Shown: positions 1 through 64,000, counted from the stretch's first letter. The stretch: 64,000 bases of DNA from Phallusia mammillata (GCA_965637545.1 OZ281495.1:4278001-4342000); one strand, 5' to 3'. Numbers and translations are program-made. The notes: generated by a model not told the origin, from the sequence alone.

Positions 1-31
1 AAATTATATTTCCGAATATGGTATTTTGTAG

Positions 32-888
32 TTACAGAAGAAAAAACAAATCCACTTTACACATCCCATGATTTTTCACCACAGGAAGAATCCTATGCCC
101 AAGTCGACATGACAAAGAAAAATAAAAGTAATTACTTGCCTTGTGTAGTAGTAAATTGAAATACCAAAAACTATGCATATTCGATATATAATTCCTTTTT
201 ACAGTCAAAGAAGAAAAAGCCAATCCACTCTATCAAGCTTACCAAAAACCTCTTGTGGATTTGCATGGAGAGCATCAGGCTCATTGTTCGAAAACGGGTG
301 AGGGTGTATTGTAAAATATATACAGTCAATTTTGTCACATTGTCATACGATTTGTTTCTGCCTAAGAACCAGATAAGAAAGAAAAAATAAATCCCCTGTA
401 TGCAGCATCGAACCCAATGAAAGGAAGTATTGAAGAAGCATATGCAATGGTTGTTAAAAAGAAACAATCTGTTATTGGTGAGATTGTTAGGTTTATATTG
501 GGTTAGATTAAAAACTAAGTGCAAACAGATAGTTTTAACTAAAAAAATTTACTGATAATTTGATTCAATTGATGGATTTGTACTAATTTACATTTTTCCA
601 ATGACAACTTAATTTTTTGGAACAGAAAGCATTGACGAAAAGGAAGAAAAGAAAAATCCCTTGTATTCCGTCTCACAACAATCTTCGTCGTTAACAGGAG
701 AAACCTATGCAACAGTGGAAAAAACAAAATCCGGTATTGTATTTACAATAGTCGAAAGTCTTTGAAATGTTTAACTTTACCATTTTGGGATAGGAGCCAA
801 TGCATCCCCGAAAAAGCCACCAAGACCCCCAATAAAAAAGAAACCAATTATTCCACCAAAAAGTACATACAATTTTTATACCAATTAA
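32..888 (+). CDS. 3' end (cytoplasmic tail) of a probable transmembrane receptor; exons 32-127, 205-297, 373-477, 626-733, 794-888
   Basis: Four AG/GT-bounded phase-1 exons of 96, 93, 105 and 108 nt splice in frame: TEEKTNPLYTSHDFSPQEESYAQVDMTKKNK / KEEKANPLYQAYQKP... / DKKEKINPLYAASNPMKGSIEEAYAMVVKKK / ESIDEKEEKKNPLYSVSQQSSSLTGETYATVEKTKS, then a Pro-rich exon KKPPRPPIKKKPIIPPK to TAA 886-888. An alternative donor at 863 to acceptor 1021 is possible. The upstream part lies outside the window. Confidence 0.8.
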
Positions 889-1685
889 GCATTCATGAAC
901 ATGTTTTAAACTTTACTTGATATAAAACAGCTTTTTCCACCATCATATCCACATTTGACGAATGTAAGTACAAGTTCCAACCCAAAAACGTTTAGAATTT
1001 AAATTTGTACTTCTTTTGTAGAACACACGCGATGTGTAGGATAATATATGTGATGAAAAACATAGAATGATGTGATTTCAACTTAGAAACGCAATTTTAT
1101 GTTTGATTTTATTTGATCACTTTTAAATATCTTTGAATCGCCGGTAATTTAAGCAAGCAGCAATTTAACTTGTCGTCTGTAATTCTTTGTATATTGTCAA
1201 AAAAGCCTGTTTCAAACGCAATGTTGGAAATACATTGTAACTCTATTCTAGTGCCTGTACTGAAATGAGGGTCAATGAGGTTTAACCTTGTCGCACGAAA
1301 TGTACTTGACCGCCAATCCATAAAAGAGAATGCTAACAGAAAAGCGAAACAAGTGTAATTTTATTAAGTCACAAACACACAGTTCTTGCGCCATGATCGT
1401 ATTGCAGTCGATTAGCCCAATAAAGTGACATTTATAGCTGATTTAACTTCTGTTGTTGGGTTGTAAACTTTGCATTTGCATTGATTTGATTACAGGAATA
1501 AAAATAATCAACGTGTTTCCAACAATTTGTTCTTTGCTTATAAAATATTTTTTGAGTATTTTAAAGATTCCCCATGTATAATGTTGTGATGAAGATATTC
1601 TTCTCAATACAATTTCCCCGTTTTCAAAGAAATTATTTTTTAGTTGAAATATTCGCCATGCAGTTTAATTATTTTTCACTGTCAC

Positions 1686-2037: not shown

Positions 2038-2263
2038 ATTTATTCTGTTGTTTGATGATATCACGGTACTTTTTTCAGCTTCTTTTCATTGAATTAGTTT
2101 TCGTTTTGTGTACAAGTATGTAGCATTTTTTGTCTATCATACATGTTGTAACTAATCTTTGTACAAAACAATTCTATCGACCTTATTCTATCTATGAGTT
2201 GTAATTGTGTCAATGTTTGGGGAATTGTTGCCGAATTTGACCTTCACCTAGTCCTACACACAA

Positions 2264-2760: not shown

Positions 2761-3029
2761 CTTGTTCATCTGTTTTGTTTTAGAACAGCTTGTGGAATAA
2801 TATTCAAAATGTAGGCAACAACAAATAATCATTTTGCTTTGAATAAAAAACTATTTTTTAAACCACACAAAACAGAAAAGATGACATCATTTTATTACCA
2901 CGAAAAAAATATTGTAAATTCTTTACCACAGTAATGCGTTGCATCAGGGAAGTACTAAATATCATGTGATCCTTTTACAGCTTCGACATAATTTCTAGCA
3001 AATTAGGGGGCCCTTTTTCTCTTCTGAAT

Positions 3030-5333: not shown

Positions 5334-7411
5334 TCAGAAGTCTGCAAAATCACGAAAGAAAATTTCTGCTTCATTGTGTTTAGTTTAATTACACGACACA
5401 AATAAAAATGCCTTGTTTATTACGTGTTTGTTATTCTGAAACAAGTATTAACTATTGGTGTTCGTAACTGAAAAATAACCTGTCTTATTTTAAATCAATT
5501 TTGAATTTTGTACCCACCTTTCATTATTTTATTCTTTAAAGCATAACCAATTGCAAGTACAAACAAACCTCCAGTTATGAAGGCAGACAACAGGAGAGCA
5601 ATCCACCCACCCTCAGGGATAGCTGCAAAAACATAATTTAGATGTAATGATTTACATACAGTTGGTAGTGTTACATAATCTTACACGTCGCATGTAGACC
5701 TTCTAAATTTCTCTGATTACCTAAAATAAAGCAAAAGTCAAGTCAACTTTTTTCCCAGCCAGAACGGTGCCGGTAAACACTACTTTTACTTCCAATAACG
5801 AAAGAGTTCGCTTAGTTGTCAATAAATGTTACAATGTGTTAATTTCGGTTTTTCGAAACCACCTTGTTGGGCTTATTCCAATTACCTGGGTTGCATATGG
5901 TTTGAAACTTGCCAGTAATGTCACACACAGCTTGGCCTTGGCCTTGTGAACAAGTTAAGTTAACTACCGTACCATAATCAACAGTACTATTGGTATTCGG
6001 CGGGCAATGTGGAATATCCAAATCAGCGGTGTTGCAAGTAACTAAGAAATGTAAACTATGCTTTTTAAATTGTCGATATACTTTTCAAGCGATCTAACAT
6101 AAGCGGTTAGAGTGAAATATCAATATCAATCATAACTCATACCTTTTACACAGTTATTTGTGTAGTTAAATGATCCATCAAACTGACAAATTCCAAAACC
6201 GTTGCCGTCAAAACCTTTTAAACATGAAAATGTAACGTTGTCTCCTAGACTTGACTTAACTGTTGATGAAGTATTTAAGCCGTTCTGAGGTGGCCCAGAG
6301 CAACCTAATTAGAATCAAAATAAACATATTTAACTAGCTGTACATGAACCAACATGATGAATTCGGTTCCTGAATTTCGATTTTAACGTTTAGAACCTTT
6401 TCAAACGTCGCACCTTCAACCACCGAGAAAGAAGTTTGTCCAAAGTACGGATGACCAAGAAGATCGGGAATAATCACAACATCACTGTCGTTTTGATGCA
6501 CTGGGCCGATTTCCAGAAAAACCATTACCGGGTTTGTGTATGTTATTCTTAGAGCACAAAATAGATTTACAAAGCAAATACCATAAAAAAAATGCAATTG
6601 TATGTGTAAAAAAAAAACTACTTAAAAAATCCCTTTTTTGATGCAAACGGTAATTTTTTTTAAACATGAAACATGATTTCGCATGAAATGCCAAATTGGA
6701 AACAAGTTTTTTTTACCACTTATAATTGCTAATGACATACCAAAAAAGGAGAATAGTCTTTGATTTGCTTTGTTTCATTACCATGCCAAGACTTTCTGTG
6801 GCCTGTAATTACTAAAATGCAGAGACAAATGTTTGAAAACACACACACCTGGTTTTAGAAGGTTCTCAATATATTTGAGTTAAAAGAAACACACTTTAAT
6901 CTTTGATATCGGAAACTTAATGTATTTGCTGACAAAATTATTATTGTTAATTATTAACAAAATTGCACCCTAAAAAAGTATGTAACACCTTGGTGTCATT
7001 CTTGGTTCAACGGACGTACATGATGTTACTGTGTGCATAAATTGACACTGCGCAATTACCTAAAGAATAAGGGAATACAGAATAAACATTTTTGTTAACC
7101 TCAGAAATTGTTACAGATTACGTTTATGTTTTGAAACACCAATACAACATACAAAGCAAACGTTAATCACCCTGCCACCAACCATCCAATTAATCACAAA
7201 GTTTGTTCCAGATAACCCAAAGGAAATTAAAGCGGTCGAATTAACAATTTGTTTTCCGGTGGTAGATCCCAACTCAAGAGGAGGATAAACTAAAACAAAA
7301 CATCAAACAAACAAACTACGTTTTTTTCAGACACAAATCCAGCAGATGTTTTTACCCACCTATTTGTCCATGTGCACAAGCAATGAAAAACAGAAGATAA
7401 AGCAGAAACAT
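5334..7411 (-). CDS. Small type I membrane protein: signal peptide, uncharacterised ectodomain exons, CCP/Sushi-like exon, TM, very short tail
   Basis: Signal exon 7411-7360 (MFLLYLLFFIACAHGQI, phase 1); exon starting at 7289 (VYPPLELGS...INWMVG); Cys exon 6041-5886 (VTCNTADLDIPHCPP...YGTVVNLTCSQG..AVCDITGKFQTICNP); TM exon 5622-5518 (GGWIALLLSAFITGGLFVLAIGYALKNK); tail D-F-stop at 5341-5334. Exons between 7170 and 6300 are unresolved. Confidence 0.6.
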
Positions 7412-12007: not shown

Positions 12008-15000
12008 TTATTCTGGGTTTTTGTGGGTTTTTGTCTTTTCGTTCGAGGAATCGCTGGTTTTTACTAAAAATCGGTTAAATAACGTTTAAAACAATCTTTT
12101 CCTAGTTGTGGCAAACTGCCAAACTTTTTTCTTTGCGAAACATTTTGCTAAAGTGAAATTGTAACGATGCTCTAAACATTGTGGAAAAATGATTCTACAA
12201 CAGGACTGTAGTGTTAGCACATTGGTTGAAATACTTGGTACATATAATTTAGATACATATAACTTTGATTTGTTTTGTCAACTGTATCGTAGGTGTCACT
12301 AGTGAACGATAAAGATTCTTGTGAGTCAGAGTACAAGGGATTTATCCTTTCTTCTTTTTTGCTGTTTTCTGCTTCAAAATGTGTTTTGTCATAAAATCTA
12401 GCAGTTAGAATTCCATCATGATTATTTTGTCTGATTTTACTGCTTCACGAGTAAAGATTTAAGACAAATATGTTCAAATATGGTTGCAACGAAAGAGAAA
12501 TGTGAATTGCCTCAGCTTTACGTTTTCAAATCAACTTTAGCTTAAAGAACAAAAGTTTGGGTATTTTGGTATATGGTGGTCACAGTGTTTGATGCGATAT
12601 CTGTGTGACAGCGAAAATGTTGCAAAATGTACATTTGGATGAAGTATTGCTATATTTGCATGAGGGTTAAAAAATGTGACAAACGAGCCCTTGCAACAAA
12701 AATATTTATCAGTAGTCCCGTAATATACAGACACTAGAGCCATTTTTACCTTGTGTTGTATATCTGTCAGAAGTTGTATCAGTGTTCATGCCACCATAAA
12801 TCGGGTTTATTCGTTCTTCCTTTTCGGATTTCTCCACTTAAAATACATAACGAGTTGACGCTGTATAGTTCGGTGCATTTACAAACGCACAACTTACTTT
12901 TGTTTTTGTCCGACATTTCGACTATTGCATGTTTTTGTTGAGACACTTCTTTGATGGTTTCATTTGTGCCAAAATAAAAGCGAAAAAGAAATGGCTAACT
13001 GTTAGTTAACCTTTTTGTCTTTTGTTTCACGATGTAACAAGTTATCAGACTCTGTTTCAACTAACATTCAGCAAAACCATTATTATTATAATCAGTGAAA
13101 TATTTGTCAAAGAGTAAAAGTGGGTTTTGCCGAAAGTTCAAATTATATGATTACTTTATACCATCTTATATTGCTATTTTCCCTGGTTGAGCTACTTTTT
13201 TTGGTAGCAACCTGATTGTTTTGGTGTGGAATTTCGCCGGCAGCAAAAGGGGATTGCTCCAATCACTAAGGAAACGAGTACAATGCATCCAACAACACTT
13301 GCAGCTATAATGACTGTTTGTTCGCCCGTGCCTGGTGGAATTGGATCAGCACCAGTAAGGTACATATGAGCAGTGAGGGACTCGTGAGGAAAGATACTGG
13401 ATTTAAGAGTGAGTTCAAATTTCTGGTCATGTGTAGATATCTGAAATTGTATGGAGTAACCTAACCTAAAGCGTACGAGCATATGGAAAATATTTGAATG
13501 ATAAATCTGAGTATACTTACCAGGTTTAAGTGAAAGGTCTGTAAAGTGCTTCCATCGTGAAACGAGATGTTGCAAGATGGACAATCAACTCTTTTGCCTG
13601 CAGATAGAGCAATAAAATGTACATCACAAGTTATTGACTTGTTAATGAACACATTGAATAGTTCCGTTTTTTACCATTAGCTGTCAAGATCCAATTATCC
13701 ACTGAAGGATTGGATAAAAAGTGAAATACACATTGTCCGAGTTGAACATCGTTGTGACTGCAATTAACAATGTTGCTAAACTCCGTAACTGCGGCAACTA
13801 ATTAAAGCAAAACAATTGATAAGCGCCCCATCGACTAAAAAGAAAGTAATTTTATCCACACTTACATAAAACATTCACAAGCACAATGCTATATGCGGTT
13901 CCAAAATTGTTGTTAATTAAACAAGTGTAATTTCCCCAGTCGAATCTTGTCCAATTCTTTAATTCCAGAATAGAAGTGTTTCTGTGAGTTTCCCGATCGT
14001 TGAGGGAAGTTATCCATTTAAATGACGTGTTCAGCTCATTTTGATACAAAACACTGCAGTTTAAATTTAAATCATCGCCAACCATGATTTGTTCTGAGTC
14101 GTGTAAGCCATGTCTTATTTCAGGAATTTCTACAAACAATAGCACTTAGATAATAGGTAATTTTGCTTTAGTTGCCATTAAAGAGACTTACTTTCGTTTT
14201 GTTGTACAACAATCAATTCCAGTGATTTGGAATTATCAACTCCATGAGCGTTTGCAGAAAAACAATAAACTGATTGATATTGGTTAATATGCTCGGTTAT
14301 GTTGCATAACCCAAAAGTTTTGTTTGCAAATTGAATTGAGCAGTTAGCTTGTGGATTAGCATCGCTCTCACAATACAACGTCACATCTTGATTTCCATTA
14401 AGTAGTAGGCGTGAACCGGTGTGAATGATGTCGGCGGACTCTTGTGGTGTTACAAGTGCATCATACGGTTTGTCTGAAAAGTGTAAAACAGAAAACAAAT
14501 AAGACAATCTGAGCTTTCGTGCAATCACAGACATAAAACAATTTCAATTCTTCTTACACAGAACAACAATGTCAACATATGCTGCTGTGTTTTGAAACAA
14601 ATCAGTCGTGTTGCAAAAATATCTTCCTGTTTCAAGTCGTGTAATATTCCGCACCAATAATAATGAATTTTCAGATGCGCTTAAGTTTAAAGGCGTAATC
14701 CATTGAAAGGTTGTTTTAAGTTCATTTTGGTAATCAACCTTACAACTCAACTTTAACGTTTGTCCTTCAATTGCAGAGGAAAGTTGTTGAATTTTTGCTA
14801 CTCCTGCCATGATAATTTAATATCAATGGGTAAACCTGATCAAATACATGACAAACTTACTTGATTCTACCACAATTATTTGCTTTCTTTTACTTTCCTG
14901 CGATCCAGCACAAGTTGAAACTTGACACGTGACATATCCTGATTGGTTGAAATAATGATTTGTGTCACATGACTTGGAAAGTATGATTTTATTGAATTCC

Positions 15001-15978
15001 CAAAGGCAAGTAGCGAAATCCACATCGCTTTTGCAGTGAAGCGAAACGTTTTGAAACGAATTGAGAAATATTGTTGATTCCGAAATAATTACGTCATTGA
15101 AAGGATCAACTGTTGTTCTAACTTTACCAGGTTTCGCTAAAAAGTATTTAGTGTTTGTAGATAAAAAATATCAAGATAGTTAGAAAATTTTGAAATATGT
15201 ACATACAAAATACATTGATAGTGATGGTATCAGATCTTCCAGTTCTCTTATATATTTGTGTAAACGGTGTTTGTGCTTGACAGTATATTTTTGTCCCATT
15301 GTGTTGTTGTTGAAGATAGAGTAAGTAGGGTTTGCCCTAACAAACACTACGGTAATATTTTTCAAACATTTAATTTTAGTAAAATGCGTGACAACCTTAA
15401 AAGCAAAAACGTTTTTAAAACAAACCAAATACTTTTTTAATGAATGTCCTTTTTCCACCAATAACAAACTTGGTCATAGTTCCTTGTGGTATTGTATCCT
15501 CGTACAAACATGTTAAGGGAAGAATGTTTCCGATTGCGTTGCATGATGATGAGTTGACTTGTAATGTAACAGATGGTGCTGAAAAAAAAATGGCATACGT
15601 GAATATAGATTTAGGGAAAATGCCCAACCGCTTTTCAGGGCCCAAAATAAAACGCTTTCAGCTTTGTATGTACTTGACTGCTGAGATTTTTCTTGCGCAA
15701 CCACTTGTGTCAGGTTAAGTAAATATTTCCACAAGATTTTTATCTTATGACAGAGTGCAAACATGAAACATATTTCCACTAACCGTTCCAGCATTGTAAT
15801 CGATTCTGACCCGACCATTGAGCTGATTGTAAACAAACTGTTTGAGTGTTTTTTAATCCTGTGCCGTTTGAATGGAAAAGCTTTCCGTCATCCTGACAAC
15901 TAAAATTTCCCGGTGAATTAAAGTTGAAATCAGATTGTGACGTCAGAATTACACCATCGCCTTACGTTTGTCCACAAC
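12008..15978 (-). CDS. CCP/Sushi + multi-Ig type I receptor with NPxY tail modules; several exons carry lesions (partial gene or pseudogene)
   Basis: Sushi exon 15978-15784 (C...FSC...C..W...C, TAA at 15964-15962). Intact Ig exons 15578-15433 + 15336-15207, 15136-14861, 14803-14558, 14473-14192, 14129-13866 (e.g. LKLSC...FQWI...ETGRYFC; LNLNC...FKWI...DWGNYTC). A disrupted exon lies at ~13770-13519. TM exon 13331-13212 (VIIAASVVGCIVLVSLVIGAIPFCCRR). Tail exons 12836-12750 (KEERINPIY), 12371-12264 (KEERINPLY..DTYDTV), 12063-12008. The 5' end and signal exon were not found. Confidence 0.8.
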
Positions 15979-45150: not shown

Positions 45151-48099
45151 ATGGAATCGCCGATGCAAAAAATGTTGCCTCCTGATCTGTATGAAGATGT
45201 TGTGGAATTGGAAAAAGCTTTCTCGATGGAAAAGCTTCAAGCCATGACTAACAGTGAAATCCCCACTTGGAAAGGCTTTCGGTTCTCTCCCCACTTTACA
45301 CCACAGCTGGTACAGTTTGCTTACGACAACTGGTCGCTGAAAGAAGAAGATGTCCTGCTTGCTTCGTTCCCAAAAACTGGTGAGACTTGATTTGTCTAAT
45401 CCTGATATTTACCGGTTGAAACGGCGTTTAAGTTGCAAGATGTTATAGCGTTTTACGTTGTGTAGTTGCTCATCATGCATTATAGTTGCTAAACGTGCAA
45501 GTTTGTAAGATATTGAATTCGGCTTATTTCCCTTGGTGAGAGCAAACATAGCGACACAAAGGCACTAAACCAGGGGCGTCCAACACGAAAGCACCGCCGT
45601 GCCAATCTAGGTTTTAAAATATACCCTCGTGCCAACGTTTGCTAGGCCTACTTTTTCCAAACCATGTCTTAAACGTCTTAACGGTAGAAAAAAATATGTT
45701 GTCAAACGCGAGTACGGAGTAAACTTGTTTACGATATTCCAGAAACCTTTTATAACATACCATGTTGTTTAAAGGGCAGAATCCATAACATGGAATATAA
45801 TACGACAGCATAAAGGCCCGGAATTATCCAGAATTCGACAGTTTCAAGCGCCTCAAAGTAGACGAATCGAGTCTAAAAACGACCAATTTAATTAGTGGAT
45901 TTGTGTAACCTTGATACTGATCATCTTTACTGAAGTTAGAATAAAAGCCAAAATGAATCCATAGAAACATAATAATTGCGTGACAAATCCTAATGTTTAC
46001 CATCTGAATGTCCAAAAATTGCGTGCCATTTTCAAATGCTCTGCGTGCCACTTTTGGCACGCGTGCCACGTGTTGGACACCCCTGCACTAAACAGTAACC
46101 AAGCCGAAAACAGCAGCACAACGGTAAAACGTTATGGAGAGCAAAATGTGGATGACATAATTGGTCGACATTGGCTGAACGCGCTGCTGCTCTGTTACTA
46201 CAAATGTGAGCCCCCGTTATGTAGCCGTTGAGATTGGGGGAAGTTAAAAGAACCATACTGGGGACTAATAGGAAACTACTAAAACTCTACACCATATCTT
46301 TACTGGAGATAAATCTTTCATTAAAAACAACGTCACCTGTGTAGGTACGAATTGGATGATTACAACTTTACGTCGCCTTTTGTACAACGAGGAGGAATTA
46401 GATTTGGTTAAAGACCTTCCTATGAGCTTGACATTGCTTGAAGCTGGGGGAGGTGAGATTGGGTTGAATATCGTTGTTTCTTTGCAAATTTATCATTCTA
46501 TCTTGGCTACATGTTTCTGCGCAGGCAAGAAGCTCGACATACTTGACCGCCTTCCGATCAACCGACGAATAATCTCGACCCACATGCCAGCAGAACTAAT
46601 CAACCTCGAGAAGATAAAGGAAAATTATGCGAAGGTAAAAAATATTCTGCTGTTTGCAGGGTTCAGCTGCAGACCGGCTACAGTATTTACAGCTTGCATC
46701 CAGTCGGAAGTTCATATTCCAAACCAGAACATGTTGTTGAACATTCTACACAGAACTTTGACTCCCAACGTTGAAACATTCCGTTGCCTGCTTGTTGCAA
46801 ACAACAAATCTTTTCTACATAAACCTGAGTTATCAACTTAATACCAGGTTTTCGTATGTCGAGTAAATTGTTCAAACGAAATAAGCAATTACCGGCTTAA
46901 GAAAGGGTTGGGAAATTGGAGGGACATCGGCACCCCAGAGTTAGTTATTTCGATCATTCTATTAAAACGTTACATATACCAGAAAATGATTGTTTCATGT
47001 AAACTCACAGGCCTGACAGTGTATTCCGCCTAAATAAAACACACAACTTACGTCGTGGGCTGTACAAAAACTCCAATACTGCTTGTGAATGTGTTGAGTC
47101 TTTGCTTGCTCAAAACGTTTGCAGAAAAAATGGCAGAAATTTACCACGGATTGATTTTTATCGCTAGGTGGTGTGCATGATGCGGAACCCAAAGGATCAA
47201 TTGGTTTCCTGGTATCACTTCTCACAGAAACTTTTTGGCAAAAATCAAACAATGGGAGAAATGGTCAACAATGGCTGGGAGAAGTTTTTTAACATCGCCG
47301 TTAATGGTACGAATAATGACGTAATTAGAGTAAATTCGTAACTTCAACATTCAATTATACACTGAGTGACATTTATTTTTTAATTTAGCATAATTTAAGA
47401 AATATTAATGCGAAGTCAATTTCCAAGCAAGGTTTTTTGATTTTCTGTGACCTGCTTGTTGCTCTTTATGTAATCTCCCGTCAGGTACTTTACCTGGTGA
47501 ATGGTATCCGCACCATCTTCTCTCCTGGTACAAACATAAAGATCATAAAAACTTTTATTTCGTCTATTACGAGGATTTAAAGAAGGTTTGTTTGGTTGAA
47601 ATGTTGTTCTGAGTTCGATCAGAACGTTCGTGTTTAAATGCAGGACTTCAATAAGGAACTCTGCAATCTTGCGGAATTCCTGGGCGTGGAAATAACGGAA
47701 AAACAAGCTTCGAAAATCGAGGAAAAGTGTTCGTTCGGAAACATGAAACAGGATATCTCGTCGTATTCCAATAACGCGAAAATGTTTCAAGCTGCTAATT
47801 TGCGTAAAGGTCAGTTGCTGTGATGATGTAAATGTTTGTTGACGTCATTGTGCGGTGAATGATGTCAAGATACATAAGTTAAGGTGAAAAAATGTAACGG
47901 TTGTCTCCATAATAGATTAGGGTAAATGGGGGATTTTGCTCCAATCTTCTAACAAATTTGTTTAGCCTAATGTGATTTTTATTTAGGCGAAGTTGGTGAT
48001 TGGAAAAATTATTTTACCGTCGCCCAATCGGAACTTGTTGATCAGAAAATCAAAGAATGCCTCGGTTCAACTGACGTCACATTCACCTATTGTTTGTAA
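45151..48099 (+). CDS. SULT: Cytosolic sulfotransferase (SULT1-like fold), 7 exons
   Basis: Exons 45151-45379, 46345-46452, 46525-46634, 47168-47306, 47485-47585, 47644-47809, 47987-48099 splice in frame. Motifs: 5'-PSB ASFPKTG|TNW, catalytic STHMP, 3'-PB RNPKDQLVS, YYEDLK, RKG|EVGDWKNYFTVAQSE. Confidence 0.95.
45571..46085. mobile_element. hAT-family MITE in SULT intron 1
   Basis: TIRs CAGGGGCGTCCAACACG / CGTGTTGGACACCCCTG; perfect 8-bp TSD CACTAAAC. Confidence 0.9.
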
Positions 48100-49495: not shown

Positions 49496-52400
49496 ATGGG
49501 GGTAAATATGTTTTGTTCGTGTAAACTATCAAAAACAAAGGTTATTCAAACGATCAAAAATCAGATTTAAATACAACTGATATAAAGAAAAAATAGCAAA
49601 GATATTGACAGATGTGGTAAATTTATGTTGTACCCTTACCACACATCATGAAAAAGTAACTTGGTAACTGTTAAATTTGCTGCAAAACATGTTGGATTTT
49701 AATAAAAAATAAAACCACAAACAACACCTAAAATATAAGAATTCAACCCGGAACAGAATATAATTTCTTATTTGGTTACTAAACTTTGGCTCCCCAACTT
49801 TATTGTGTAATAGGAGTTTAAAACATGCGAACCAGACAAGATCAGTTGTTATCTCGGTAAGGGCGGCTTGATTGGCTACGGCGGATTTTCCTCTGTATGG
49901 CTCGGAAGGATGGAAAACAAGGATGTTGCAGTAAAATGTATAAGTGTTATATCAGGACCCGAAGGAATTCTACTTACCAAAGAGCGGTACGTTGCTTATT
50001 ATAACTCAAAAAACAGTAACATGGTGTAAAACATAGTGAACAAGGCCTAGCGAAGGCGTTAAAACGATTTGGCTGGTCACCAAGCATTCCCACATATGGC
50101 GGGGCAATAGGCGAACCGATTTGTATATTAGTATGCCGTGATCGTTGGTCTTCGGGTACGCTTCAGGGTTGATTCGAGTAATGATTTTTTTCATTGTATA
50201 AACGCAAAAACTATTGCATTATACAACCATACCACGCGTCACCGAATTTGGGCACATCGCGCAAGTTAATACAAGTCGGTTAAACATTGACTGGTGTTTA
50301 AACTGCCCGTTAAATTGATTTTAATTTTAGAGTTTTGAAAGAGTTCGAATTGCTTTGGAAGGCAGATCACGAAAACATCGTAAAAGCATTCAAACTGACG
50401 CAATGGGATAGAAACAACTGGATGGCCATAGTGACGGAATACTTGCCCTGCGGTGACCTTGAGAAGTTATTGTTTGACCCAAGCTACAGAAAAACGCGAA
50501 TCAGCTTTCCTTTGCGTCTGCGATTGATTTATCACGTCACAAAAGGGGTGGGGTACTTACACAATCTTCCTAAAAGCGGTCACGTGGTTCATGGTGACCT
50601 AAAGTGCAACAACATTTTGCTGACGGTCAATCTTACGTGCAAAATTGCAGACTTCGGCAGCGCGTTTTTGGTAAACAGTGATGACGAAGAAGGGCATAAA
50701 GGCACGCATGTTCCGTTTACAATAACTGATGCTGCTCCGGAGCTTCTCACTGAAAAGGTGCTTCCAAGCACATTGACTGACGTCTACAGCGTAGGTTTAA
50801 TTGTGGAGGCCGTACTGTTTCGTTCTTCTCCATTTTCACGTGTACTATAAAGTCCACCCAGCACCAATCATGTCGAATGGTTAAAGGCGGCGGTGTTAAA
50901 TGAAACACCATTTCCTAAAGAGCTATGCACACTGGTACACAACGAAGCAAACGTAATGGGATACACAGATTTAGTTGTTGAGATCGAAGCCGAGGCGAAA
51001 AAATGTCGGAATCAAATGCCGAATGACCGTCCACAGATTACTCATGTCCGTGAAAAATTTTGCTCTTTACTGGAGAAATATTCCCCAAAGAGACAGGACA
51101 TACAGGCGGTCAGTAAGATTCTGAAAGCTGGACCCAAATCTGCCCGAGATGAAACCGAGTTAGTTCCGCTATCTCGGTTTTGTCCCGCAAACATGGTTGT
51201 GTTTCCAAATCGACACATCGATATTCAGCAGTCACAGATTACAAGAAGAGGAAAACAAGCTGGGGGACGAAAGAAGCAATCGAAGAAACAAGTTAAAAAA
51301 GCGATATTACAAAGATTGTCATTGGGTACGTGACAAACCTTGAGCGTGCCATGCTAATATTTAAAACATGTCAAATATCGTTCGAATATCCTTACTTCAT
51401 TGGCTCACTTTATACGTCGAGTAAATAAATACAAGGCTATTTATTACAGAATATGACGAATGCGTATTGCCGTTTTTATGAGATTTTAATTACATTTTGC
51501 AAAATTCAGTGTGCGTTGATGATAATCTGGATCAAAAACAAAGTGCAACAGGAAAAGATTTGGAAGCTGCACCAAGAAAAAACAGACAACGCGCAGCAGA
51601 AAAGAGTGACGCTTATACCCACGAAATTGAAATTCATACCAATAAATCTTCTACTTCCCCAAAATTACGAGCAGGTCAGTAATAAAATTTCAACATTCGC
51701 ACCAAATCACCCGGTAGTGCAGATTTGTCAGTTTAAAAATGCGATAGAAGTAAATTTGGTACCTTGTTTAATTCTTGCACGTAGCACGTTGGTTTTGTTG
51801 TTAAAAAGTTTCATCCAAATTGCATTTACTTTACATTGCGTTCAAGTTGTCCTTAAATATTGGCCTGATCAAGTAAATAATTCCAAGCTTTTTTCGACAG
51901 AAAATGACGAACTTCCACTCAAAGAGTTGTTGCAATCTGACCGTCGCCCTGTTACAGGTCACAAAGAGGTTGTTTCACTTAATAAGCCCACTTTTGAAGG
52001 TAACTCTTTCACACAATAATTCTGTGGTGATAATCTTGAGCAAAACTAAAGTGAGGCAGCAGGAAGAAATTGACAGCAACACTTACTTCACTTTGCCATT
52101 GAGTTTGTCTTTAATGTTGACCCGATTAAATCGTCCAGCAAATAACTCTGGGATTGTTTTCTTCAGAGAATGTAAAGCGCTTCAGTGTTGAGGCATCGCA
52201 GCCCGAACCTCACCCTGTTGAAAAAGACAAAGAAGTCATTCTGTGGGACCAACAAAGCCCTGAAGGTAAATATATTCTAAGCTTCTTTTCTATCACTTTG
52301 ACAAGTATTAATTTCACATATTTTTGCAATTTTGCCTACCTCACTGACACTTCAACTGATTTAGATAAGTGATAAAAATTCACCTGTGACACTAAAATGT

Positions 52401-56377: not shown

Positions 56378-59300
56378 ATGTTGACACTGACACTTTTTTT
56401 CTGTGTTCTTACTTGTTTTGTTGGAGTGACTGGTGATGCTAAAGAAAATTTTGGTAAGTCCTGTGCCATTGTATTTAACTCCACCACTTTTGAAAGTATT
56501 ACTTTGGTCATGATAAAAATATGCAGTGAGGTACATATTGTTTTCTGTCTTCAAATTATAACTTTTTCACACAGGTATTGAGTTGGGACCAAATGAGTGC
56601 AAGAATCTTAAACTGCTTCGTACCACCCTTATGTTGGCCATAAATGATCAACCCATTCCCAATGATGAACCAAAGCTGATTGAAGGAATTATCTTTGCTT
56701 TGTAGGTGTACTTTAAAAAAATATATAGATTTAATTCAGTTTGATTAGATTTGTATTCTTGCATTATTCTTAAATATATTGCTAATTAAGATTGCTACTA
56801 TTCTTGAAAAATAAAACAGCATATACTAAATCAGACTTCCATATACATGGACAAAAAAACTTGAGTGATTGTTAGGTTGAGTGGTTAAACTATTTGTTAT
56901 CATGTTGTTATTATTGTTTGCCTTAACTAAAAATTATGAAACAAATGTATTTGTTTTAACTGTTTTCTTGTTGTCGTTTAGCACAAAAAGCAATAAAAAT
57001 CTGCTGATTTGTGTTTCTGAACAAACTGGAAAAATGACATTTAACACATGGAGAATTGATTTCAATGAGAGTGATAAAAAAAGCCGGGACTTTTGAATGT
57101 CACTGTTGATGATGGCCTTTTTTCAACCTCCGGCAAGTGTTTAAAAAAATATAGGTCAAATATGTATATTACTTGCTTGTTCAAGTTGGATACCACTTTG
57201 TAAGGCCTGTACAGCGGGCCACCAGGCTCATTTGGTTTGTGTTTAATAGTGCGTTTTTGTGTGAAAGAAGAAAACGGTATCTTTTAAAAGTCCTAATACA
57301 CTAAATCATTTTGGCAAAGCTCTAGCAATTATGAGTTTGCATGCGCTGTCTCTTTCTGCTGTAGTTGCGCACCTAACCATTTATGTATAAATGTGTTACA
57401 GATGCCAAACTTTTAGACCCTGAAAAGTGCACTATGTTAAACTATGGTAAATCTCTGTCTGTATCTGTGTATATTTCAAACAAGATGTTTACTTGTGATT
57501 GGAAGGCAGGTTCCACAATAACACATGAAGTTGACAATCTAAAGTTTGAATGGTGTGTGTCTTATCTTTCTCTATACATGCACTTATTGTGTGAATAAGT
57601 ACTAAAAAATACTCAAACAAAGATAGAGAAATGGTATAAAAATATACATGTTGTATTGCATTTCTGGTAGTGTCTTTGCTGTAACACCTCATGTTTTATT
57701 ACTTTGAGTAGTTAATTTGTATATTAGTCAACATGGTAATAAGCAAAGACAGTGTAACATTCCTAATTGGCCTTTTTAGTCTAAAGTAACTATTTAAGCT
57801 ATCATATAATGCCACTTATTTTGAAGTATTATCTTACATTAATGTAGATTTTGTTATCAAGCTAATTCTACTATTGCTTGAGTTCATTGAATTGCTTACA
57901 GATTTTGTGCGAGAATTATAACTTTTAGTTAAAATTAAATCATTTTATGAAGATAAAACCTGTAAATAAATAAGACCTAGTTCCACTCCACCAAGTGATT
58001 TTAATAAAAATAACACACAAACAATTAGGACACACAAAACATCTGATATTGTAAGACTGATTATGAAGCATGTTGTTGTTTGTTTTCCAGTTTGAATCTG
58101 ACTTAGTCACAGCTTTTTCCAACTTACTTTTCTAATCATTGTGCTATGATTAGTTTTTTCAAGCGAAAAAAATCAATTACCTAAAACAAACATTAATATT
58201 ATTGTAAAAAGTTTTTTTCTCAATACTTTGAAGTAAAGATGCCAAAAATGCCTGTGAAATTAAATCTATAATTGTTGTTTCAGTTTGAATCAGTCGGTAA
58301 AGTTGTGTCTGATGGAAAACTTTCATGGAAACAAGCATTTCTTTTTGTTTTTAAAGTTTAACGAAAGTGTCAAAACTGAAAAATTCCAAGTACAGAGGAA
58401 AGGTTAGTTTGTTGCATACAAAATATTGAAAATACTACACCATAATTATCTGAGGGTTAAAGCACACTTAGTTATCCAACACATTTGTTTGTTATTGTTT
58501 TTATATTGAAGCCATTGCTTTACCGTTGATTATAAAGCATCAATAATACTTTCTGTCTTATTGTTGCTAGAAAAAAATATGACAAAAACTTTGAGAACCT
58601 CTGATCAAATATTACGTTTAACAAGGGTAATGTTTATTAATCATTACTGTTTAGGCCATGATTTTGGATGGCTCGCTGGGATTGTAGTTGCTGTGGTCTT
58701 TGCAGGTTCTGTGATTGTAGTCTGTGTGAAACGGTGTAAGGTAAGTAAAGTAATGTACGGTTTAAACTCAGGCTGCATCACAGATTTTTTTAAGCAAGTG
58801 TGAGCATAGTTTTTGTATTGTAGAAATACATTTTTTCGCAAATTGTACCAGGGACTTAAACCTTTTTCATTTGCCACTAGTGGTTTCTGTATCCGGTGTG
58901 GGAAACAGTGTTTTAGATCCAAAATTTGTGGATGAAACGGAACTGATATGTGTTACACTTTCGTGAAATATATGTGTAGCATCACAATAGTTAATAGTTG
59001 CTCAACAAAGCAAAAATTGTTAATCTGAGTTGGTCAGTTCTCAGCCAAACAAAAAAAATTACTAAGGCTGAGTTAAGATGATCATAAATTCATAACTGTG
59101 GTCAGCCCTGAATCATCTATGTCTACCAGTGATTATATTCAATCTGGCGATCCCCCTACTATGAAGCTGACATGTGCAGCATACCTGGCAGGCGATGGTG
59201 CTCGTGATTCAACTTTCAGGGGATTCTCCACTGAGCCTGCATAGCTCAGTTGGTCGAGTCCCGGAAAGACTCCTGTCGTGGATTCGAATCCCACCACAGG

Positions 59301-59544: not shown

Positions 59545-61717
59545 ATTGTGTTTGGCAGTTTTCTTCAGTACAAAGTGAAGTTGTGCAATTTGTATGGACG
59601 GGTCGGGCTGGGCCAAAACCAGATTACTTGGTATCAAGCATGCTGTTTTCAATGCTCAGTGCTTGGGCGAGTAGTTGCACAAACTGCATAGAGTATTACT
59701 TATTCATATCCATGCCCCACATATGAAACCAGTGTTCGAAAGCTAATAAAAAACAACTGTTTTAATAAATGTGCTAGTTGATGGGACACTCAACCTTCTG
59801 GGGTCTGTAAACTTAGTACTTGATGGTGACGAAGGGATCTTGGAAAGCTACAAAACTAGCATGGATTTTGAAATGTTTGTGATGACGCAATGCACTGAGC
59901 ATTAGCATGAGATACTGGGTAAGCAAACAGAACATTTGCAGTTTTAGCAACTCCCTAGCAATTTGTACTTTATTTTTATTCCTCTTCAATCTTTACTGAC
60001 GTTTTACCTTCTTACAAATCTACTCCACTGTCCTCTCGCAATCCAGTATTATACCGATAAAACATTCTTCCTTATTTTAAAAAATGTGTAGCTGTGTTGT
60101 GCCTCTTTTGCGGCTCTCTTGTTTACTTGTCATATTTGATGTGTTTGACATTTGTTTACCCAATCTCATGGCACTAAATTTTAATAGACTTCATTATTAT
60201 AAAACAATATCTTTTAGGTGAGTCCAGTTTACAGTCAGGGAGTACAAAGCATAAATGCAGAAAGGACAAGACGTAAAGAAAGAAGTACAATTTTGTGGAA
60301 TTACAGTTTAACAATTTTTTTAAGGGTTTAAAAATGTGCAAACAATCTGACAATTTCACTTCAGAATTTTGTATTCGGTAGTTCAGTTTTGTAAACCTTT
60401 ATCAGACATTGCAGACCTGCATTTCAGTGCAGCTGGCGATAGGTCGTATTAACCAGTGTAGACAGTTATTTAAAACCCATATGTGACTGAACATAGGAAG
60501 TGGTTCAAGTATTATTGTTTCCCTTATTAAGTTTAATACGATCTGAAGCAAAACTACAGAAATTGTAACGTGACAAATTCGGGGTAAGTTATTGTTGTAA
60601 AAATATACATCTGAGAGAAATAATTTATAACCACTGTTAAAAAACGACTTGAAAAGGTGTCTTTAATACACACAGAATAAAACATCACCACTAAACGTAA
60701 ATTTACCGTTAGGGGATTTACCATATGGTAGTTTTTACTGTTTTGTGACTTAAAAATCGTAGGGTGTTTCAAATCGTACGTAATATGTTTGAGTACAAAT
60801 TGACTCTGGCGAAACCGACCAACACAATATAATTCCAACCTGTTAGTGAAAATGTCAAAAGTTACTGACATAAATGCCAACAATACGATGTCTATTATTC
60901 GCACAGTAGGTAATATGGTTTTCATGACGCCAGCATTGTTATTGACAAAACAGGAACCAAATGTAAAATGATCTCAATACAGGAACTAGTCTATGCCTTT
61001 AGATTGTCAGCGTTTGTAATTAATATTTAAAGCCAGCAAGTAAAGTCTTCTTGCCAGACAAACGAGTAAACTTAAGATGGGTTTGTTTTTATTTCGCTTG
61101 ACTGGCATTCAATGCTAGCCTTGCGTGTTTTTCAAACTCAGTCACTGCCAGCATTGTATGTTATTCCATCTTACTGCTGTTTCAGACCCAGCAGTTGGTA
61201 TGTCGAGTTTTTTTAGTAAAAGTTGGAATAGCAAATCAATCGCTGGATCAGGGTTGAACGTACAGAAGTATTTAACCGGCAGTGTAGTAGTAGTTAGATC
61301 ATTACAAGGTGTTATATGGCGGGAATAAAGTAAATGCAAATGCAAGGCTAAGTTACCAGGGGCATATCTAAACTATTGTTAGCAGATTTCGGTTTCAAAC
61401 CCCAACTTTTGAGAACAGAAACCCGATGAGGCGCAAATAATATTAATTTAGTACAATTGATTGAAAAGAGCGCCGACGTTTAGCCAACCTTAATGTACAG
61501 CTACGACTGAGATATTAAAGGAAGGGACACTCTAACCTTGTTGGTTACTACAAAACGGTTATTCATTTGAATTTTTTTGATTTGACTGTTACATACGACT
61601 AGTAAGTTACCTTTAAATATTTTCACGTTAACAGGCATCACATATTCTTAGACATTTGAAATGGTTATGCATTTTACAGGATGAGAAAATCATAATGAAC
61701 AGACAACAGAGTTAAAC

Positions 61718-63978
61718 ATGGAGGTAAATATAAAACAAAAACACCGTTATTTTTTATAGCTCTGCTTTGTTTGTTGGTCTGCTAACACAAGATAACAAAT
61801 ATTAACTCAACTCGTTGCAAATCAATTGAATTAATAATAGTTTGGTGCTTTACCCCGGTTGAATTAATTTGTACTTAAAACATATCTAGAACATCACAGG
61901 TCCATTACAGAAGTCATGAACGTAAGGTCACTACTTCACATAGCCAACGGTATAAAATCCGTTCAACTTTCATAAATTTAAATATGAAAGATGAAACATA
62001 ATTCTTGCCATCAGTTGCTAAACGGTGGTAAATGGTAAAGAGTGCTTAATGTCAAAAATACCTAGTTATAGACCTATTCGAGCTGTGTTATATTACATTG
62101 TATTTTAAATTGGCTACTAAACTAAACATATTACTTTTGCGTGCAGGAGTTTGAGAGCTGCCAACCTCATAATATATGTTGTTATGCCGGCAATCGAGGT
62201 TTACTCGGCAAAGGAAAATTTGGTTTTGTCCGACTCGGGCAAATGAACGGCAAAGATGTTGCACTGAAATGTTTTAACCTGAAATCAAGACCATTAGGAG
62301 TTTTACTAACACCAGAAAAGTACGTGGGTTTGTTTTGTAATTTAACCCGTAGTTTGAAATGTGGGCAGAACACGGAAGTACGTCAAACCGCAGATAAACT
62401 GTGGCTAGAGTGTGCTGTGCTGACAATAAATACTACGCCATGCGAAATACAATGACCAAATAGACCTACTATGTGGCAGCCTGCAATGAAACGTCCCACC
62501 GAAGGCTTGTACCTCATTAGTGATGAAGTATGCCACTTTTTAGGTCATAATAAGGAATTGCATTATTCATTAGTTTATAGTTATATGAACCATGGTATGA
62601 CTTATTGGTCAATAGGATCATGTCTATAACCCCCATGCGTCCTAGTGTACAATTGCTATGTATAACTAAGCAGCATTGCCTTAATTTTCAGAATTTCAAA
62701 TGAGTTCGAGTTGCTTTCCATGACACACCACGAAAACGTTGTAAAAACATTCGGGTTAACGCAATGGAATGAAAACAATTGGATGGCGATTGTGACGGAA
62801 TATTTGCCCTGCGGTGATCTTGCAAGGATTTTGTATGGCACAAGAGATGATAAAAGCAAAAATTATGACATCAGCTTTCCTTTGCAAGTACGACTAATTT
62901 ATGACGTTACCAAGGGGGTGGAGCATTTACACAATCTTTCGGGAGGAGGTCACGTGGTTCACGCAGACTTGTTATGTAACAACATTTTACTGACCGACAA
63001 TCTTACATGTAAAATTGCTGATTTCGGCAGCGCATGTTATTTCAGTGATGATAAGCAAGAAAACGGAAAGAAAGTCCCATTTCCAGTCAGTTTCTCTGCC
63101 CCTGAGCTTGTCAGTGACATGGCATTCCCGAGCAAGCAGACAGACGTCCACAGCGTAGGTACGGTTATCCAGGCTGTGCTCTACCGGTTTCGGCCATTTT
63201 CACATATTTTGTATGGCCCTCCAGTTAGTCGCGAGGAAGCTAATGCCGTAGTTTTAAACAATGCACCATTTCCTGATGATGAACGTGCGCTTATCCGTAG
63301 TAAAGCCAAACAACAGGGATACACGGATTTGTTTACTACGATTGAAGCAGAGGGAAATAGATGTCGAAGTCAAAGGCCAAATGACCGCCCACAGATTACT
63401 GATGTCCGTGAAAAATTTTGCTGTCTACTTAAAAAACACTACCCTACAGGGGACGAAATCCAAACCATTGTGAAGTTGGTAAATTTTCAAGGAACTTCAG
63501 ATGAAACTAAACTCGCTCCACTTTCAAAATTTTGTCCGGAAGATGGAGGTTTACTTCCAAATCGAAATGGTAAGCAACAACCACAAATTAAGAGAAAAGG
63601 AACGAAAAGCAATGGAGTGTGTAGGAAGCGAGTAGCAAGTCATACCAACGAGTCTATATCTTCTAAAACATCGTCGACAGGTAGGTGTCAAACAGTCAGC
63701 AATAAATCAGGGGCCTAATCTTTGACAATATCGTCCATATTTTAATAAGATTGTCCCCATTGACTAAGAAAGTCACTACAAACTGTGTGGTTTCATTGAA
63801 TTTAAAGTTAGTTTCATGCCTCTTTTCGAAATACATGACACACAAAAAAGTATAAGCAGCATGGAACTTTTGTCAGGTCAGGAGGAGATAAATGACAGAC
63901 ACAGAAGAATTACAAGGCAAAACCAACAAAGGAAACAACCAGCAGACAACACATCTACCTTACATACCTTGTCAGCAG
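61718..63978 (+). CDS. K7: RIPK-like kinase with variant catalytic loop; 3' end runs off the window
   Basis: Probable start ATG GAG| at 61718-61723; exon 62147-62319 (LGKGKFGFV, VALK); exon 62692-63680 (HADLLCNN, IADFG, SAPE); linker exon 63877-63978. Confidence 0.85.
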
Positions 63979-64000
63979 GTCAGTAAAAAACAATACCAGG

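What the first reader, a model, noticed from the sequence alone, without database searches (positions are those of the whole stretch)
32..63978. Whole locus as a candidate invertebrate-chordate immune/allorecognition signalling complex
Seen: within 64 kb there are two Tyr-motif receptors, two short-tailed membrane proteins, TNF-like remnants and at least seven non-RD kinases, with heavy duplication and pseudogenisation. Established: clustering, rapid turnover, Ig/CCP ectodomains with ITIM-like tails and non-RD kinases typify innate recognition loci (e.g. Hydractinia Alr, Botryllus fuhc-linked genes). Inference: receptors and anchored kinases form one pathway. The sequence shows linkage only, not interaction.
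Basis: inference. Interest (0 to 1): 0.75.

Follow-up and report, generated by a model that had tools for sequence, protein, structure and literature searches.

The report
Receptor genes beside kinase gene array
This stretch of sea-squirt DNA is where a cluster of surface-receptor genes meets a row of seven immune-type kinase genes. Nothing beyond their being neighbours shows that the two work together, and the reported TNF-like pieces could not be found.

Summary
Most of the listed parts are real. There is the end of one Tyr-motif receptor (1-885, +) and a second, multi-Ig receptor (about 12.2-16.0 kb, -). There is a small two-sushi membrane gene (5.5-7.4 kb, -) and a possible second small membrane gene (56.4-58.7 kb, +). 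Seven RIPK-like non-RD (HGD/HAD) kinase units lie on the + strand from 19.8 to 63.7 kb; five have an open main exon and two are broken.

Two points fail. No TNF-like sequence was found in 123 ORFs.

The "one pathway" reading rests on linkage alone, and the tests I could run lean against tight coupling:
- Duplications copy kinase units only, never a receptor with a kinase.
- The kinases have a Ser/Thr-type catalytic loop and no SH2, PTB, death, CARD or RHIM part, while the receptor tails carry Tyr motifs.
- The nearest outside relatives (32-38% identity, ascidian) have no Ig or sushi neighbours.
- The published Botryllus fuhc gene list has no kinase.

Expression could not be tested. I read the window as the junction of two separately expanding gene families in a duplication-prone region. 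Earlier notes of this scan found both families before on other DNA of this genome.

The parts
1..885 (+). 3' end of receptor A. Four tail exons each carry EEKxNPLY (about 37-123, 207-311, 372-491, 613-762), three of them with (E)xYAxV. A Pro-rich terminal ORF lies at 775-885. The ectodomain lies upstream of the window.
   Evidence: tail exon 613-762 is 54% identical to receptor B's tail exon
5498..7411 (-). Small membrane gene S1. It has a signal-peptide-like start (MFLLYLLFFIACAHG) at 7411, sushi exons at 6129-6308 and 5842-6084, and a TM exon at 5498-5680 with a stop 13 residues after the TM. A weak donor could instead extend it.
   Evidence: Pfam Sushi E=0.0012
12217..15961 (-). Receptor B. 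Sushi-like exon 15782-15961; split Ig-like exons 15418-15657 and 15151-15336; Ig-type exons 14826-15170, 14547-14816, 14181-14543 and 13855-14145 (a two-Ig unit duplicated); stalk plus TM within 13195-13584; tail exons 12712-12837 (NPIY) and 12217-12444 (NPLY, YDTV). No signal-peptide exon was identified.
   Evidence: Pfam Ig_3 1.5e-7 and 2.5e-5, Sushi 0.17; internal duplication 31-38% identity
18100..19300 (.). Very high-copy dispersed repeat in the 3.8-kb spacer between the heads of receptor B and kinase K1. A related copy lies at 54726-55017.
   Evidence: depth about 48,000 against a baseline of about 85 in DNA runs
19770..22626 (+). Kinase K1. N-lobe exon 19770-19943, main exon about 20107-21004 (HGDLKCGN), basic low-complexity tail exons about 21383-22183, and a hydrophobic exon from 22498 (WLIIAIVFVILFGVVL) that may splice on at a GTATGT donor near 22621. 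A 5' start exon was not found.
26647..27442 (+). Kinase pseudogene K2p. It is frameshifted and has a deletion in the catalytic loop (HGD-RDN).
28531..29883 (+). Kinase K3. N-lobe exon 28531-28707; main exon from about 28789 (HGDLKCDN, DFG, APE).
35784..37025 (+). Kinase K4. N-lobe exon 35784-35957; main exon 36069-37025.
   Evidence: tandem duplicate of K5 (35098-37236 matches 40672-42836 at 78% nt identity; dS 0.37)
41299..43459 (+). Kinase K5. N-lobe exon 41299-41472, main exon 41631-42602, tail exon 42877-43071, and a hydrophobic C-terminal exon ending near 43459. An orphan N-lobe fragment lies upstream at about 40429-40556.
45142..47820 (+). Cytosolic sulfotransferase gene, apparently intact and multi-exon, inside the kinase array.
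   Evidence: Pfam Sulfotransfer_1 on three exons, E 8e-7 to 3e-6, covering consecutive profile positions 93-226. The PKTG|TNW loop is split between 45387 and about 46353.
49814..51330 (+). Kinase K6. N-lobe exon 49814-50026. The main exon is interrupted by an in-frame TAA at 50848-50850. Basic tail ORFs follow at about 52.6-53.6 kb.
56378..58739 (+). Possible small membrane gene S2. Signal-peptide-like exon (MLTLTLFFCVLTCFVGVTG) at 56378, a Cys-containing ORF at 57377-57595, and a TM exon about 58656-58739 that ends at the donor AAG|GTAAGT. It has no family match.
   Evidence: no Pfam hit
62126..63983 (+). Kinase K7. The N-lobe exon lies within 62126-62452 and the main exon at 62681-63715. The catalytic loop is HADLLCNN (Arg to Ala and Lys to Leu). 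The tail runs off the window.

Best explanation
The window is the junction between two independently expanding, fast-evolving multigene families in a duplication-prone part of an ascidian chromosome.

On the left (1-16 kb) lie Ig/sushi type-I receptors with NPxY plus (D/E)xYxxV tails, laid out like the Botryllus fester co-receptors, and a small sushi membrane gene. On the right (19.8-64 kb) lies a tandem array of RIPK-like HGD (non-RD) Ser/Thr-type kinase genes with basic disordered tails and, in some, a C-terminal hydrophobic exon. The array grows by unequal crossing-over of kinase-only units and loses copies to frameshift and nonsense mutations. A sulfotransferase gene and high-copy repeats are interspersed.

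Each family may well act in innate recognition or signalling: the receptors through Tyr phosphorylation and PTB/SH2 adaptors, the kinases as membrane-tethered RIPK/IRAK-style transducers. That part is inference. Their adjacency is best explained by shared genomic neighbourhood, not by a demonstrated common pathway.
For: - Gene map from six-frame ORFs and Pfam.
- Self-comparison shows that every duplication block holds kinase plus tail sequence only, or receptor-tail sequence only.
- The kinases are under relaxed purifying selection (dN/dS 0.24-0.47). Most splits are old (dS about 1); only K4/K5 is recent (dS 0.37).
- Two of seven kinases are broken, and orphan fragments are present.
- The sulfotransferase gene sits inside the array.
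- The best solved match is RIPK2.
- No TNF, death, CARD, TIR, SH2, PTB, HECT or DnaJ domain appears in 123 further ORFs, and there is no RHIM core.
- The nearest outside kinases are ascidian (Clavelina lepadiformis, Phallusia mammillata) at only 32-38% identity. They occur with other partners (GBP fusions) and without Ig/sushi neighbours.
- Earlier scan notes (unchecked leads) place RIPK-like arrays and FcoR-like clusters at many other sites of this genome, both together and apart.
Against: - Per earlier scan notes, kinase arrays lie on both sides of receptor genes over roughly 130 kb or more: an array 68 kb upstream and an FcoR-like cluster starting 1.3 kb downstream. Such interleaving could reflect selection for linkage.
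- Receptor B and kinase K1 are head to head, 3.8 kb apart.
- In Botryllus, polymorphic cytoplasmic proteins (HE3L, HSP40L, BHF) are linked to FF/FcoR pairs (PMC12065747), so linked cytoplasmic partners have a precedent.
- Expression could not be examined. The RNA-guess runs held only the repeat.
Confidence: 0.65

Rival explanations
1. Functional supercluster. The membrane-tethered RIPK-like kinases are the signalling subunits of the neighbouring Ig/sushi receptors, and linkage keeps co-adapted receptor-kinase combinations together.
For: - The two families are physically interleaved (map; scan notes).
- Receptor B and K1 are arranged divergently, 3.8 kb apart.
- Some kinases have hydrophobic C-terminal exons that could place them in the same membrane.
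- Botryllus offers a precedent of cytoplasmic genes linked to FF/FcoR pairs.
Against: - There is no co-duplication of receptor and kinase.
- A sulfotransferase gene lies inside the array.
- The kinases are Ser/Thr-type while the tails carry Tyr motifs.
- The kinases have no SH2, PTB or death-fold docking module.
- By my reading of the TM stretches listed, none of the receptor or small-protein TMs holds a charged residue, so there is no sign of KIR/DAP12-style pairing.
- The spacer between B and K1 is filled with a high-copy repeat.
- No receptor lies next to the nearest Clavelina relative.
- No kinase appears in the published fuhc gene lists.
Confidence: 0.15
2. Largely decaying region. Most of these copies, kinases and receptor B alike, are unexpressed relics of past duplications, and the window has little present function.
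For: - Two of seven kinases are broken, and orphan exons and tail copies are present.
- K7 has lost the catalytic-loop Lys.
- No signal-peptide exon was found for receptor B, and its sushi exon lacks the first Cys.
- No kinase start exon was found.
- No RNA contig lies on any exon in the stretch laid.
- No public protein is within 50% identity of any of the kinases, not even in Phallusia cDNA-derived sets.
Against: - Five kinases keep open exons of about 300 codons with intact VAxK, HxD, DFG and APE motifs.
- dN/dS is 0.24-0.47 across splits with dS about 1, which needs long-term purifying selection.
- The RNA runs available were small and probably not adult immune tissue.
Confidence: 0.12
3. 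Both families act in a non-immune setting, for example gamete or larval-settlement recognition, so the immune label is wrong even if the genes are active.
For: No functional or expression data tie either family to immunity in this species. If the genome is Phallusia mammillata, as earlier scan notes say, the animal is solitary (my own knowledge) and does not fuse colonies.
Against: The closest characterised relatives are immune: RIPK2, RIPK3 and IRAK4 among the top solved matches, and FcoR in Botryllus allorecognition (PMC11507803).
Confidence: 0.08

Closest known systems
Botryllus schlosseri fuhc-linked fester (FF) / fester co-receptor (FcoR) clusters (PMC11507803, PMC12065747)
   Same: - Ascidian setting, with tandem fast-evolving type-I Ig receptors.
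- Cytoplasmic tails built of Tyr motifs, including YAxV/YAIL-like cores with acidic residues upstream.
- Small sushi-domain membrane genes among the receptors.
- Non-receptor cytoplasmic genes interspersed (HE3L, HSP40L and BHF in Botryllus).
   Different: - No canonical ITIM or hemITAM here; NPxY modules dominate instead.
- The small sushi gene has two sushi exons and one TM exon, whereas fester has one sushi domain and three TM exons.
- The small sushi gene is not head to head with a receptor in this window.
- No HECT, DnaJ or fuhc-type EGF/Ig gene was found.
- The Botryllus locus descriptions name no RIPK-like kinase.
- Sequence homology to Botryllus FcoR was not tested.
RIPK family (RIPK1-3) and IRAK/Pelle, non-RD TKL kinases of innate immunity
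   Same: The kinase domain is most like RIPK2 (E 1.8e-19), then RIPK3 and IRAK4. The Arg of the HRD motif is replaced (HGD/HAD). It is a Ser/Thr-type catalytic loop.
   Different: - No death, CARD, RHIM or ankyrin module.
- Only about 30% identity to any named relative.
- A family-specific extension of about 90 residues after the kinase domain.
- Basic disordered tails and, in some copies, a hydrophobic C-terminal exon.
- Tandem-array organisation.
Uncharacterised ascidian HGD kinases: Clavelina lepadiformis CAK8682277.1 (532 aa), Clavelina GBP-kinase fusions, and the Phallusia mammillata 'CaMKII-like' protein CAB3227504.1
   Same: They share the HGD catalytic loop and nearby sequence (AHGDVKPDNILLTADLRCKIADFG in Clavelina against AHGDLKCDNVLLTADLRCKIADFG in K5) and part of the C-terminal extension. 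All are ascidian.
   Different: Identity is only 32-33%. The Clavelina protein has a 200-residue N-terminal region and no TM. The others are fused to GBP-type GTPase domains. None has Ig or sushi neighbours in the 10-kb flanks examined.
Vertebrate leukocyte receptor complex / NK complex (KIR, LILR, Ly49 clusters)
   Same: Birth-and-death clusters of paired Ig-type receptors with long signalling tails or short tails.
   Different: Those clusters do not contain arrays of the downstream kinases. Their signalling partners (DAP12, FcRgamma, Src, Syk, SHP) are mostly unlinked, and pairing uses charged TM residues that are absent here.
Plant receptor-like proteins with receptor-like cytoplasmic kinases (non-RD kinase rule of Dardick and Ronald; my own knowledge)
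   Same: The concept of kinase-less surface receptors signalling through separate membrane-associated non-RD kinases.
   Different: No homology and no evidence of association here. This is an analogy only.

Membership tests
Fester co-receptor (FcoR) family | Type-I membrane protein with Ig-domain ectodomain and a single TM | tested here: met
   Receptor B: Ig_3 E 1.5e-7 and 2.5e-5 on two exons, two more Ig-type exons found by internal similarity, and a TM stretch TVIIAASVVGCIVLVSLVIGA. For receptor A only the tail is in the window.
Fester co-receptor (FcoR) family | Tyrosine motifs in the cytoplasmic tail (ITIM, hemITAM, ITSM or YxxI/L/V core) | tested here: met
   Four (D/E)xYxxV cores (ESYAQV, EAYAMV, ETYATV, DTYDTV) and six NPxY motifs. 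There is no canonical ITIM, ITSM or hemITAM.
Fester co-receptor (FcoR) family | Encoded head to head with a fester-family gene | tested here: not met
   S1 (-) lies tail to tail with receptor A, and its head faces the 3' end of receptor B. Receptor B's head faces kinase K1 (map).
Fester co-receptor (FcoR) family | Sequence homology to Botryllus FcoR proteins | not tested
Fester family (FF) | Signal sequence, one sushi domain, then three TM exons | tested here: not met
   S1 has a signal-peptide-like start, two sushi exons and one TM exon followed by a stop. No further TM exon was seen downstream (architecture from PMC11507803).
RIPK family | TKL-group kinase domain closest to RIPK1-4 | tested here: met
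   The best PDB sequence matches are RIPK2 (1.8e-19), ahead of CTR1, TNNI3K, RIPK3 and IRAK4.
RIPK family | Homotypic interaction module (death domain, CARD, RHIM or ankyrin repeats) | tested here: not met
   No such Pfam family was found in the kinase ORFs or in 64 inter-kinase ORFs. No [IV]Q[IVLC]GxxN core appears in any frame.
Active protein kinase (as opposed to pseudokinase) | VAxK Lys, HxD Asp, catalytic-loop Lys/Asn, DFG and APE | tested here: met
   All are present in K1, K3, K4 and K5. K6 has them but carries a stop codon. K7 has Leu for the catalytic-loop Lys. K2p is degraded.
TNF superfamily | TNF homology domain (PF00229) | tested here: not met
   No hit at E 0.1 or better in 123 ORFs of 60 aa or more, nor in the targeted scans. 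Shorter or very decayed fragments cannot be excluded.
Cytosolic sulfotransferase | Sulfotransfer_1 domain with a PKxGTxW 5'-PSB loop | tested here: met
   Three exons match consecutive parts of PF00685 (profile positions 93-226). The PKTG|TNW loop is split across exons 1 and 2.
fuhc-type histocompatibility locus | Gene content (fuhc-sec/tm, BHF, HSP40L, HE3L next to FF/FcoR pairs) and extreme polymorphism | tested here: not met
   No HECT, DnaJ or EGF+Ig gene was found. A second DNA sample differs by about 0.6% in unique intergenic sequence (14 differences in 2255 bases), which is not extreme. That rests on a single comparison.

The most novel reading that the evidence does not exclude
The membrane-tethered RIPK-like kinases are dedicated signalling partners of the neighbouring kinase-less Ig/sushi receptors. 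That would be an animal counterpart of plant receptor-like protein plus cytoplasmic non-RD kinase pairs, kept in linkage inside an FcoR-type recognition cluster. It would add a Ser/Thr-kinase arm to ascidian self/non-self recognition, which so far is thought to run on ITIM/ITAM-type tyrosine signalling.
Probability: 0.1. Interest if true: 0.8.

Novelty: new member of a known kind. Interest (0 to 1): 0.35.

Why it matters
If the receptors and kinases were shown to act together, it would reveal an unknown signalling arm for FcoR-type recognition receptors in the closest invertebrate relatives of vertebrates. It would also show an immune gene complex that keeps receptors and their transducers in linkage. 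As it stands, the window is useful as a mapped example of two lineage-specific, fast-evolving ascidian gene families lying side by side. It is also a caution that adjacency of two very abundant families is weak evidence of shared function.

Tried and rejected
- TNF-like remnants. Pfam on 123 further ORFs found none. A pair of ORFs sharing 'DWYILP' (3737-4009 and 7778-8080, -) turned out to be a non-coding dispersed repeat that matches in several frames with stops.
- Canonical ITIM, ITSM and RHIM motifs: none.
- DAP12-style charged TM pairing: I saw no charged residue in the receptor or small-protein TM stretches listed. This is my reading of the sequences; no dedicated computation was run.
- N-terminal docking domain on the kinases: the Clavelina relative's 200-residue N-terminal region has no match in the window.
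- Expression: the one reads call showed the RNA-guess runs lying only on a high-copy repeat, so nothing can be said.
- Word-indexed protein search: only distant fungal and plant TKL kinases. The full profile search gave ascidian relatives, but at 38% identity or less.
- Conserved synteny from the kinase side: no Ig or sushi near relatives in L001, L002, L004, L006 or L007; orthology is uncertain.
- Synteny from the receptor side was not possible. Single exons are outside the length window of the search tool for full-length receptors.
- Rfam and tRNA scans: nothing.
- Species identity: 'Phallusia mammillata' comes from earlier scan notes and was not verified here.

Full report
WHAT THE WINDOW IS. 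The sequence is AT-rich (32-41% G+C), has no gaps and carries split genes with GT-AG introns, so it is eukaryotic. Earlier notes of this scan call the genome a sea squirt, Phallusia mammillata. I did not verify the species. The nearest named relatives of the kinases are ascidian proteins from Clavelina lepadiformis and Phallusia mammillata, which fits an ascidian origin.

GENE MAP, LEFT PART (1-16 kb).
- Receptor A. On the + strand the window opens inside the cytoplasmic tail of a receptor whose ectodomain lies upstream. Four small exons each encode EEKxNPLY, and three of them also encode (E)xYAxV (ESYAQV, EAYAMV, ETYATV). A proline-rich end follows.
- Small membrane gene S1. On the - strand it runs from a signal-peptide-like start at 7411, through two sushi exons (Pfam Sushi E 0.0012 for one), to a TM exon that reaches a stop 13 residues after the membrane span.
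- Receptor B. Also on the - strand, it has a sushi-like exon, a split Ig-like exon pair, four Ig-type exons that are an internal duplication of a two-Ig unit (31-38% identity), a stalk/TM exon and two tail exons with NPIY and NPLY. I found no signal-peptide exon for it, and its sushi exon lacks the first cysteine, so its 5' end is open.
- Motif counts. The six NP[LI]Y motifs of the two tails share one context (EEKxNPLY). The other seven NPxY hits in the six-frame translation have none. No canonical ITIM, ITSM or hemITAM is present. The Tyr cores have an acidic residue at -2, as described for about half of the Botryllus FcoR core motifs (PMC11507803).

GENE MAP, RIGHT PART (19.8-64 kb). A tblastn with one kinase exon finds seven homologous units, all on the + strand.
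- Each intact unit has a small N-lobe exon (GxGxFx, VAxK) that starts at a splice acceptor, so at least one 5' exon is still unknown.
- Each also has one large exon with the rest of the kinase domain and a family-specific extension of about 90 residues.
- The catalytic loops read HGDLKC[DGN]N in K1 and K3-K6, which is non-RD and Ser/Thr-type. K7 reads HADLLCNN.
- K2p is frameshifted and has a deletion in the loop. K6 has an in-frame TAA at 50848-50850.
- Downstream of the large exons lie basic low-complexity ORFs and, for K1, K5 and the K5-like copy after K3, a hydrophobic exon. K1's hydrophobic exon is followed by a good splice donor, so 'tail-anchored' is plausible but not established.
- The best solved-structure match is RIPK2 (1.8e-19), followed by CTR1, TNNI3K, RIPK3 and IRAK4.

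- An apparently intact cytosolic sulfotransferase gene lies between K5 and K6. Three exons match consecutive parts of Sulfotransfer_1, and the PKTG|TNW loop is split over the first two exons.
- The second 'short-tailed membrane protein' (56378-58739, +) has a signal-peptide-like exon and a TM exon, but that exon ends at AAG|GTAAGT, so its tail length is unknown.
- TNF-like remnants were not found. Pfam scans of 123 ORFs of 60 residues or more outside the known genes gave no TNF hit and only chance-level matches.
- A candidate ORF pair sharing 'DWYILP' is a non-coding dispersed repeat.

DUPLICATION HISTORY.
- Self-comparison shows blocks that hold kinase plus tail sequence. K4 and K5 lie in a 2.1-kb block at 78% nt identity. 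There are kinase-less copies of the K4-type and K5-type downstream regions at 23.5-25.0 kb and 32.8-34.5 kb, and an orphan N-lobe fragment at 40.4 kb.
- There is one block between the two receptor tails (615-728 against 12379-12269). No block contains both a receptor and a kinase.
- Pairwise dN/dS of the large exons is 0.24-0.47. dS is about 1 for all pairs except K4/K5, which is 0.37. This means relaxed but real purifying selection and mostly old splits.
- For that calculation the two halves of K6 were placed in their own alignment columns. Nothing was put at the stop codon.

TESTS OF THE 'ONE PATHWAY' IDEA.
1. Co-duplication: absent. This contrasts with Botryllus FF/FcoR pairs, which are gained and lost as pairs.
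2. Biochemical fit: the tails carry Tyr motifs (NPxY, YxxV) that call for tyrosine kinases and PTB/SH2 adaptors. The kinases have the HxDLKxxN loop of Ser/Thr kinases and no SH2, PTB, death, CARD, TIR or RHIM element.
3. Membrane pairing: I saw no charged residue in the TM stretches of the receptors or small proteins listed, so nothing points to KIR/DAP12-style pairing. This is my reading of the sequences, not a dedicated computation.
4. Promoter sharing: receptor B and K1 are divergent, but the 3.8-kb spacer is largely a repeat present at several hundred times the single-copy depth.
5. Relatives elsewhere:
   - The word-indexed search found only distant TKL kinases.
   - The full profile search found 338 proteins at E 1e-30 or better, but none above 38% identity to any window kinase.
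   - The closest full-length relatives are Clavelina lepadiformis CAK8682277.1 (532 aa, HGDVKPDN, no TM) and a Phallusia mammillata cDNA-derived protein.
   - Around the Clavelina gene (10 kb either side), 48 ORFs gave only retro-element integrase hits and no Ig or sushi.
   - Another Clavelina locus has two GBP-kinase fusions.
   - Four metagenome-derived eukaryotic contigs match the window only in the kinase.
   - Orthology of these relatives is uncertain, so this is weak evidence against conserved linkage.
6. [quoted passage not shown] None of HECT, DnaJ or fuhc-type genes was found here. I found no paper on RIPK-like expansions in tunicates in the held library.
7. Expression and polymorphism:
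   - Two runs hold the stretch 14500-20499 as DNA.
   - The runs guessed to be RNA lie only on the high-copy repeat, so expression of receptor B and K1 is untested.
   - One DNA sample is identical to the window over the long pieces. The other differs at 14 of 2255 bases (about 0.6%) plus small indels in unique intergenic pieces. That is modest for an ascidian, but it is a single comparison.
8. Genome-wide context (earlier scan notes, used as leads only):
   - RIPK-like kinase arrays with TM, TPR, Kelch or GBP partners occur at many sites on several chromosomes.
   - FcoR-like clusters also occur at several sites. Some are next to kinases (68 kb upstream of this window, and this window itself) and some are not (7.9 Mb away).
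   - With two families this abundant, some adjacency is expected by chance. One earlier follow-up reached the same view for another kinase-receptor neighbourhood.

For that reason the receptor could not be used to find full-length relatives, and receptor-side synteny was left out.

VERDICT. The receptors, one small sushi membrane gene, seven non-RD RIPK-like kinase units and the duplication and decay are real. The TNF remnants are not, the ITIM label is loose, and a sulfotransferase gene was overlooked. The claim that they form one signalling complex rests on linkage alone, and the indirect tests I could run lean against it. I rate it a new member of a known kind: an ascidian FcoR-type receptor cluster abutting a lineage-specific RIPK-like kinase array. 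Both families were already found by this scan on other DNA of the same genome.

Noticed in passing
window 2260-2765: A 507-bp stretch that is 97% identical to its own reverse complement: a near-perfect palindrome or foldback element. ORFs on both strands give the same protein-like reading.
   Followed up: no
window 18100-19300 (related copy 54726-55017): A dispersed repeat present at several hundred times single-copy depth in DNA runs. It is also the only part of the laid stretch found in the runs guessed to be RNA. Many different joints suggest a large and varied repeat family.
   Followed up: partly
window 45142-47820 (+): An apparently intact cytosolic sulfotransferase gene embedded between kinases K5 and K6.
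   Followed up: partly
window 62981-63004 (K7 catalytic loop): K7 reads HADLLCNN. Both the Arg of HRD and the catalytic-loop Lys are replaced while the reading frame stays open, so it may be a pseudokinase or an altered-mechanism copy.
   Followed up: no
window 3670-4280 and 7710-8620: A pair of copies of a non-coding dispersed repeat (about 67% identity). Its ORFs share short strings such as DWYILP and could be mistaken for exons.
   Followed up: yes
L005:1-17853 (Clavelina lepadiformis CAUIVY010000124.1): Two neighbouring genes, each fusing a guanylate-binding-protein (GBP) GTPase domain to an HGD-type kinase domain (products of 1331 and 905 aa).
   Followed up: no
L004:6030-6554 (Clavelina lepadiformis CAUIVY010000006.1): By eye, the gene just upstream of the Clavelina kinase CAK8682277.1 seems to resemble that kinase's own N-terminal, family-less 200-residue region. 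It could be a free-standing copy of that module.
   Followed up: no
window 39099-39189 and 43995-44087: A short inverted pair of a roughly 90-bp element (80% identity). GC-richer ORF-like stretches nearby (about 34.4-34.8, 39.0-39.3 and 43.8-44.2 kb) look alike and probably form a small mobile-element family.
   Followed up: no
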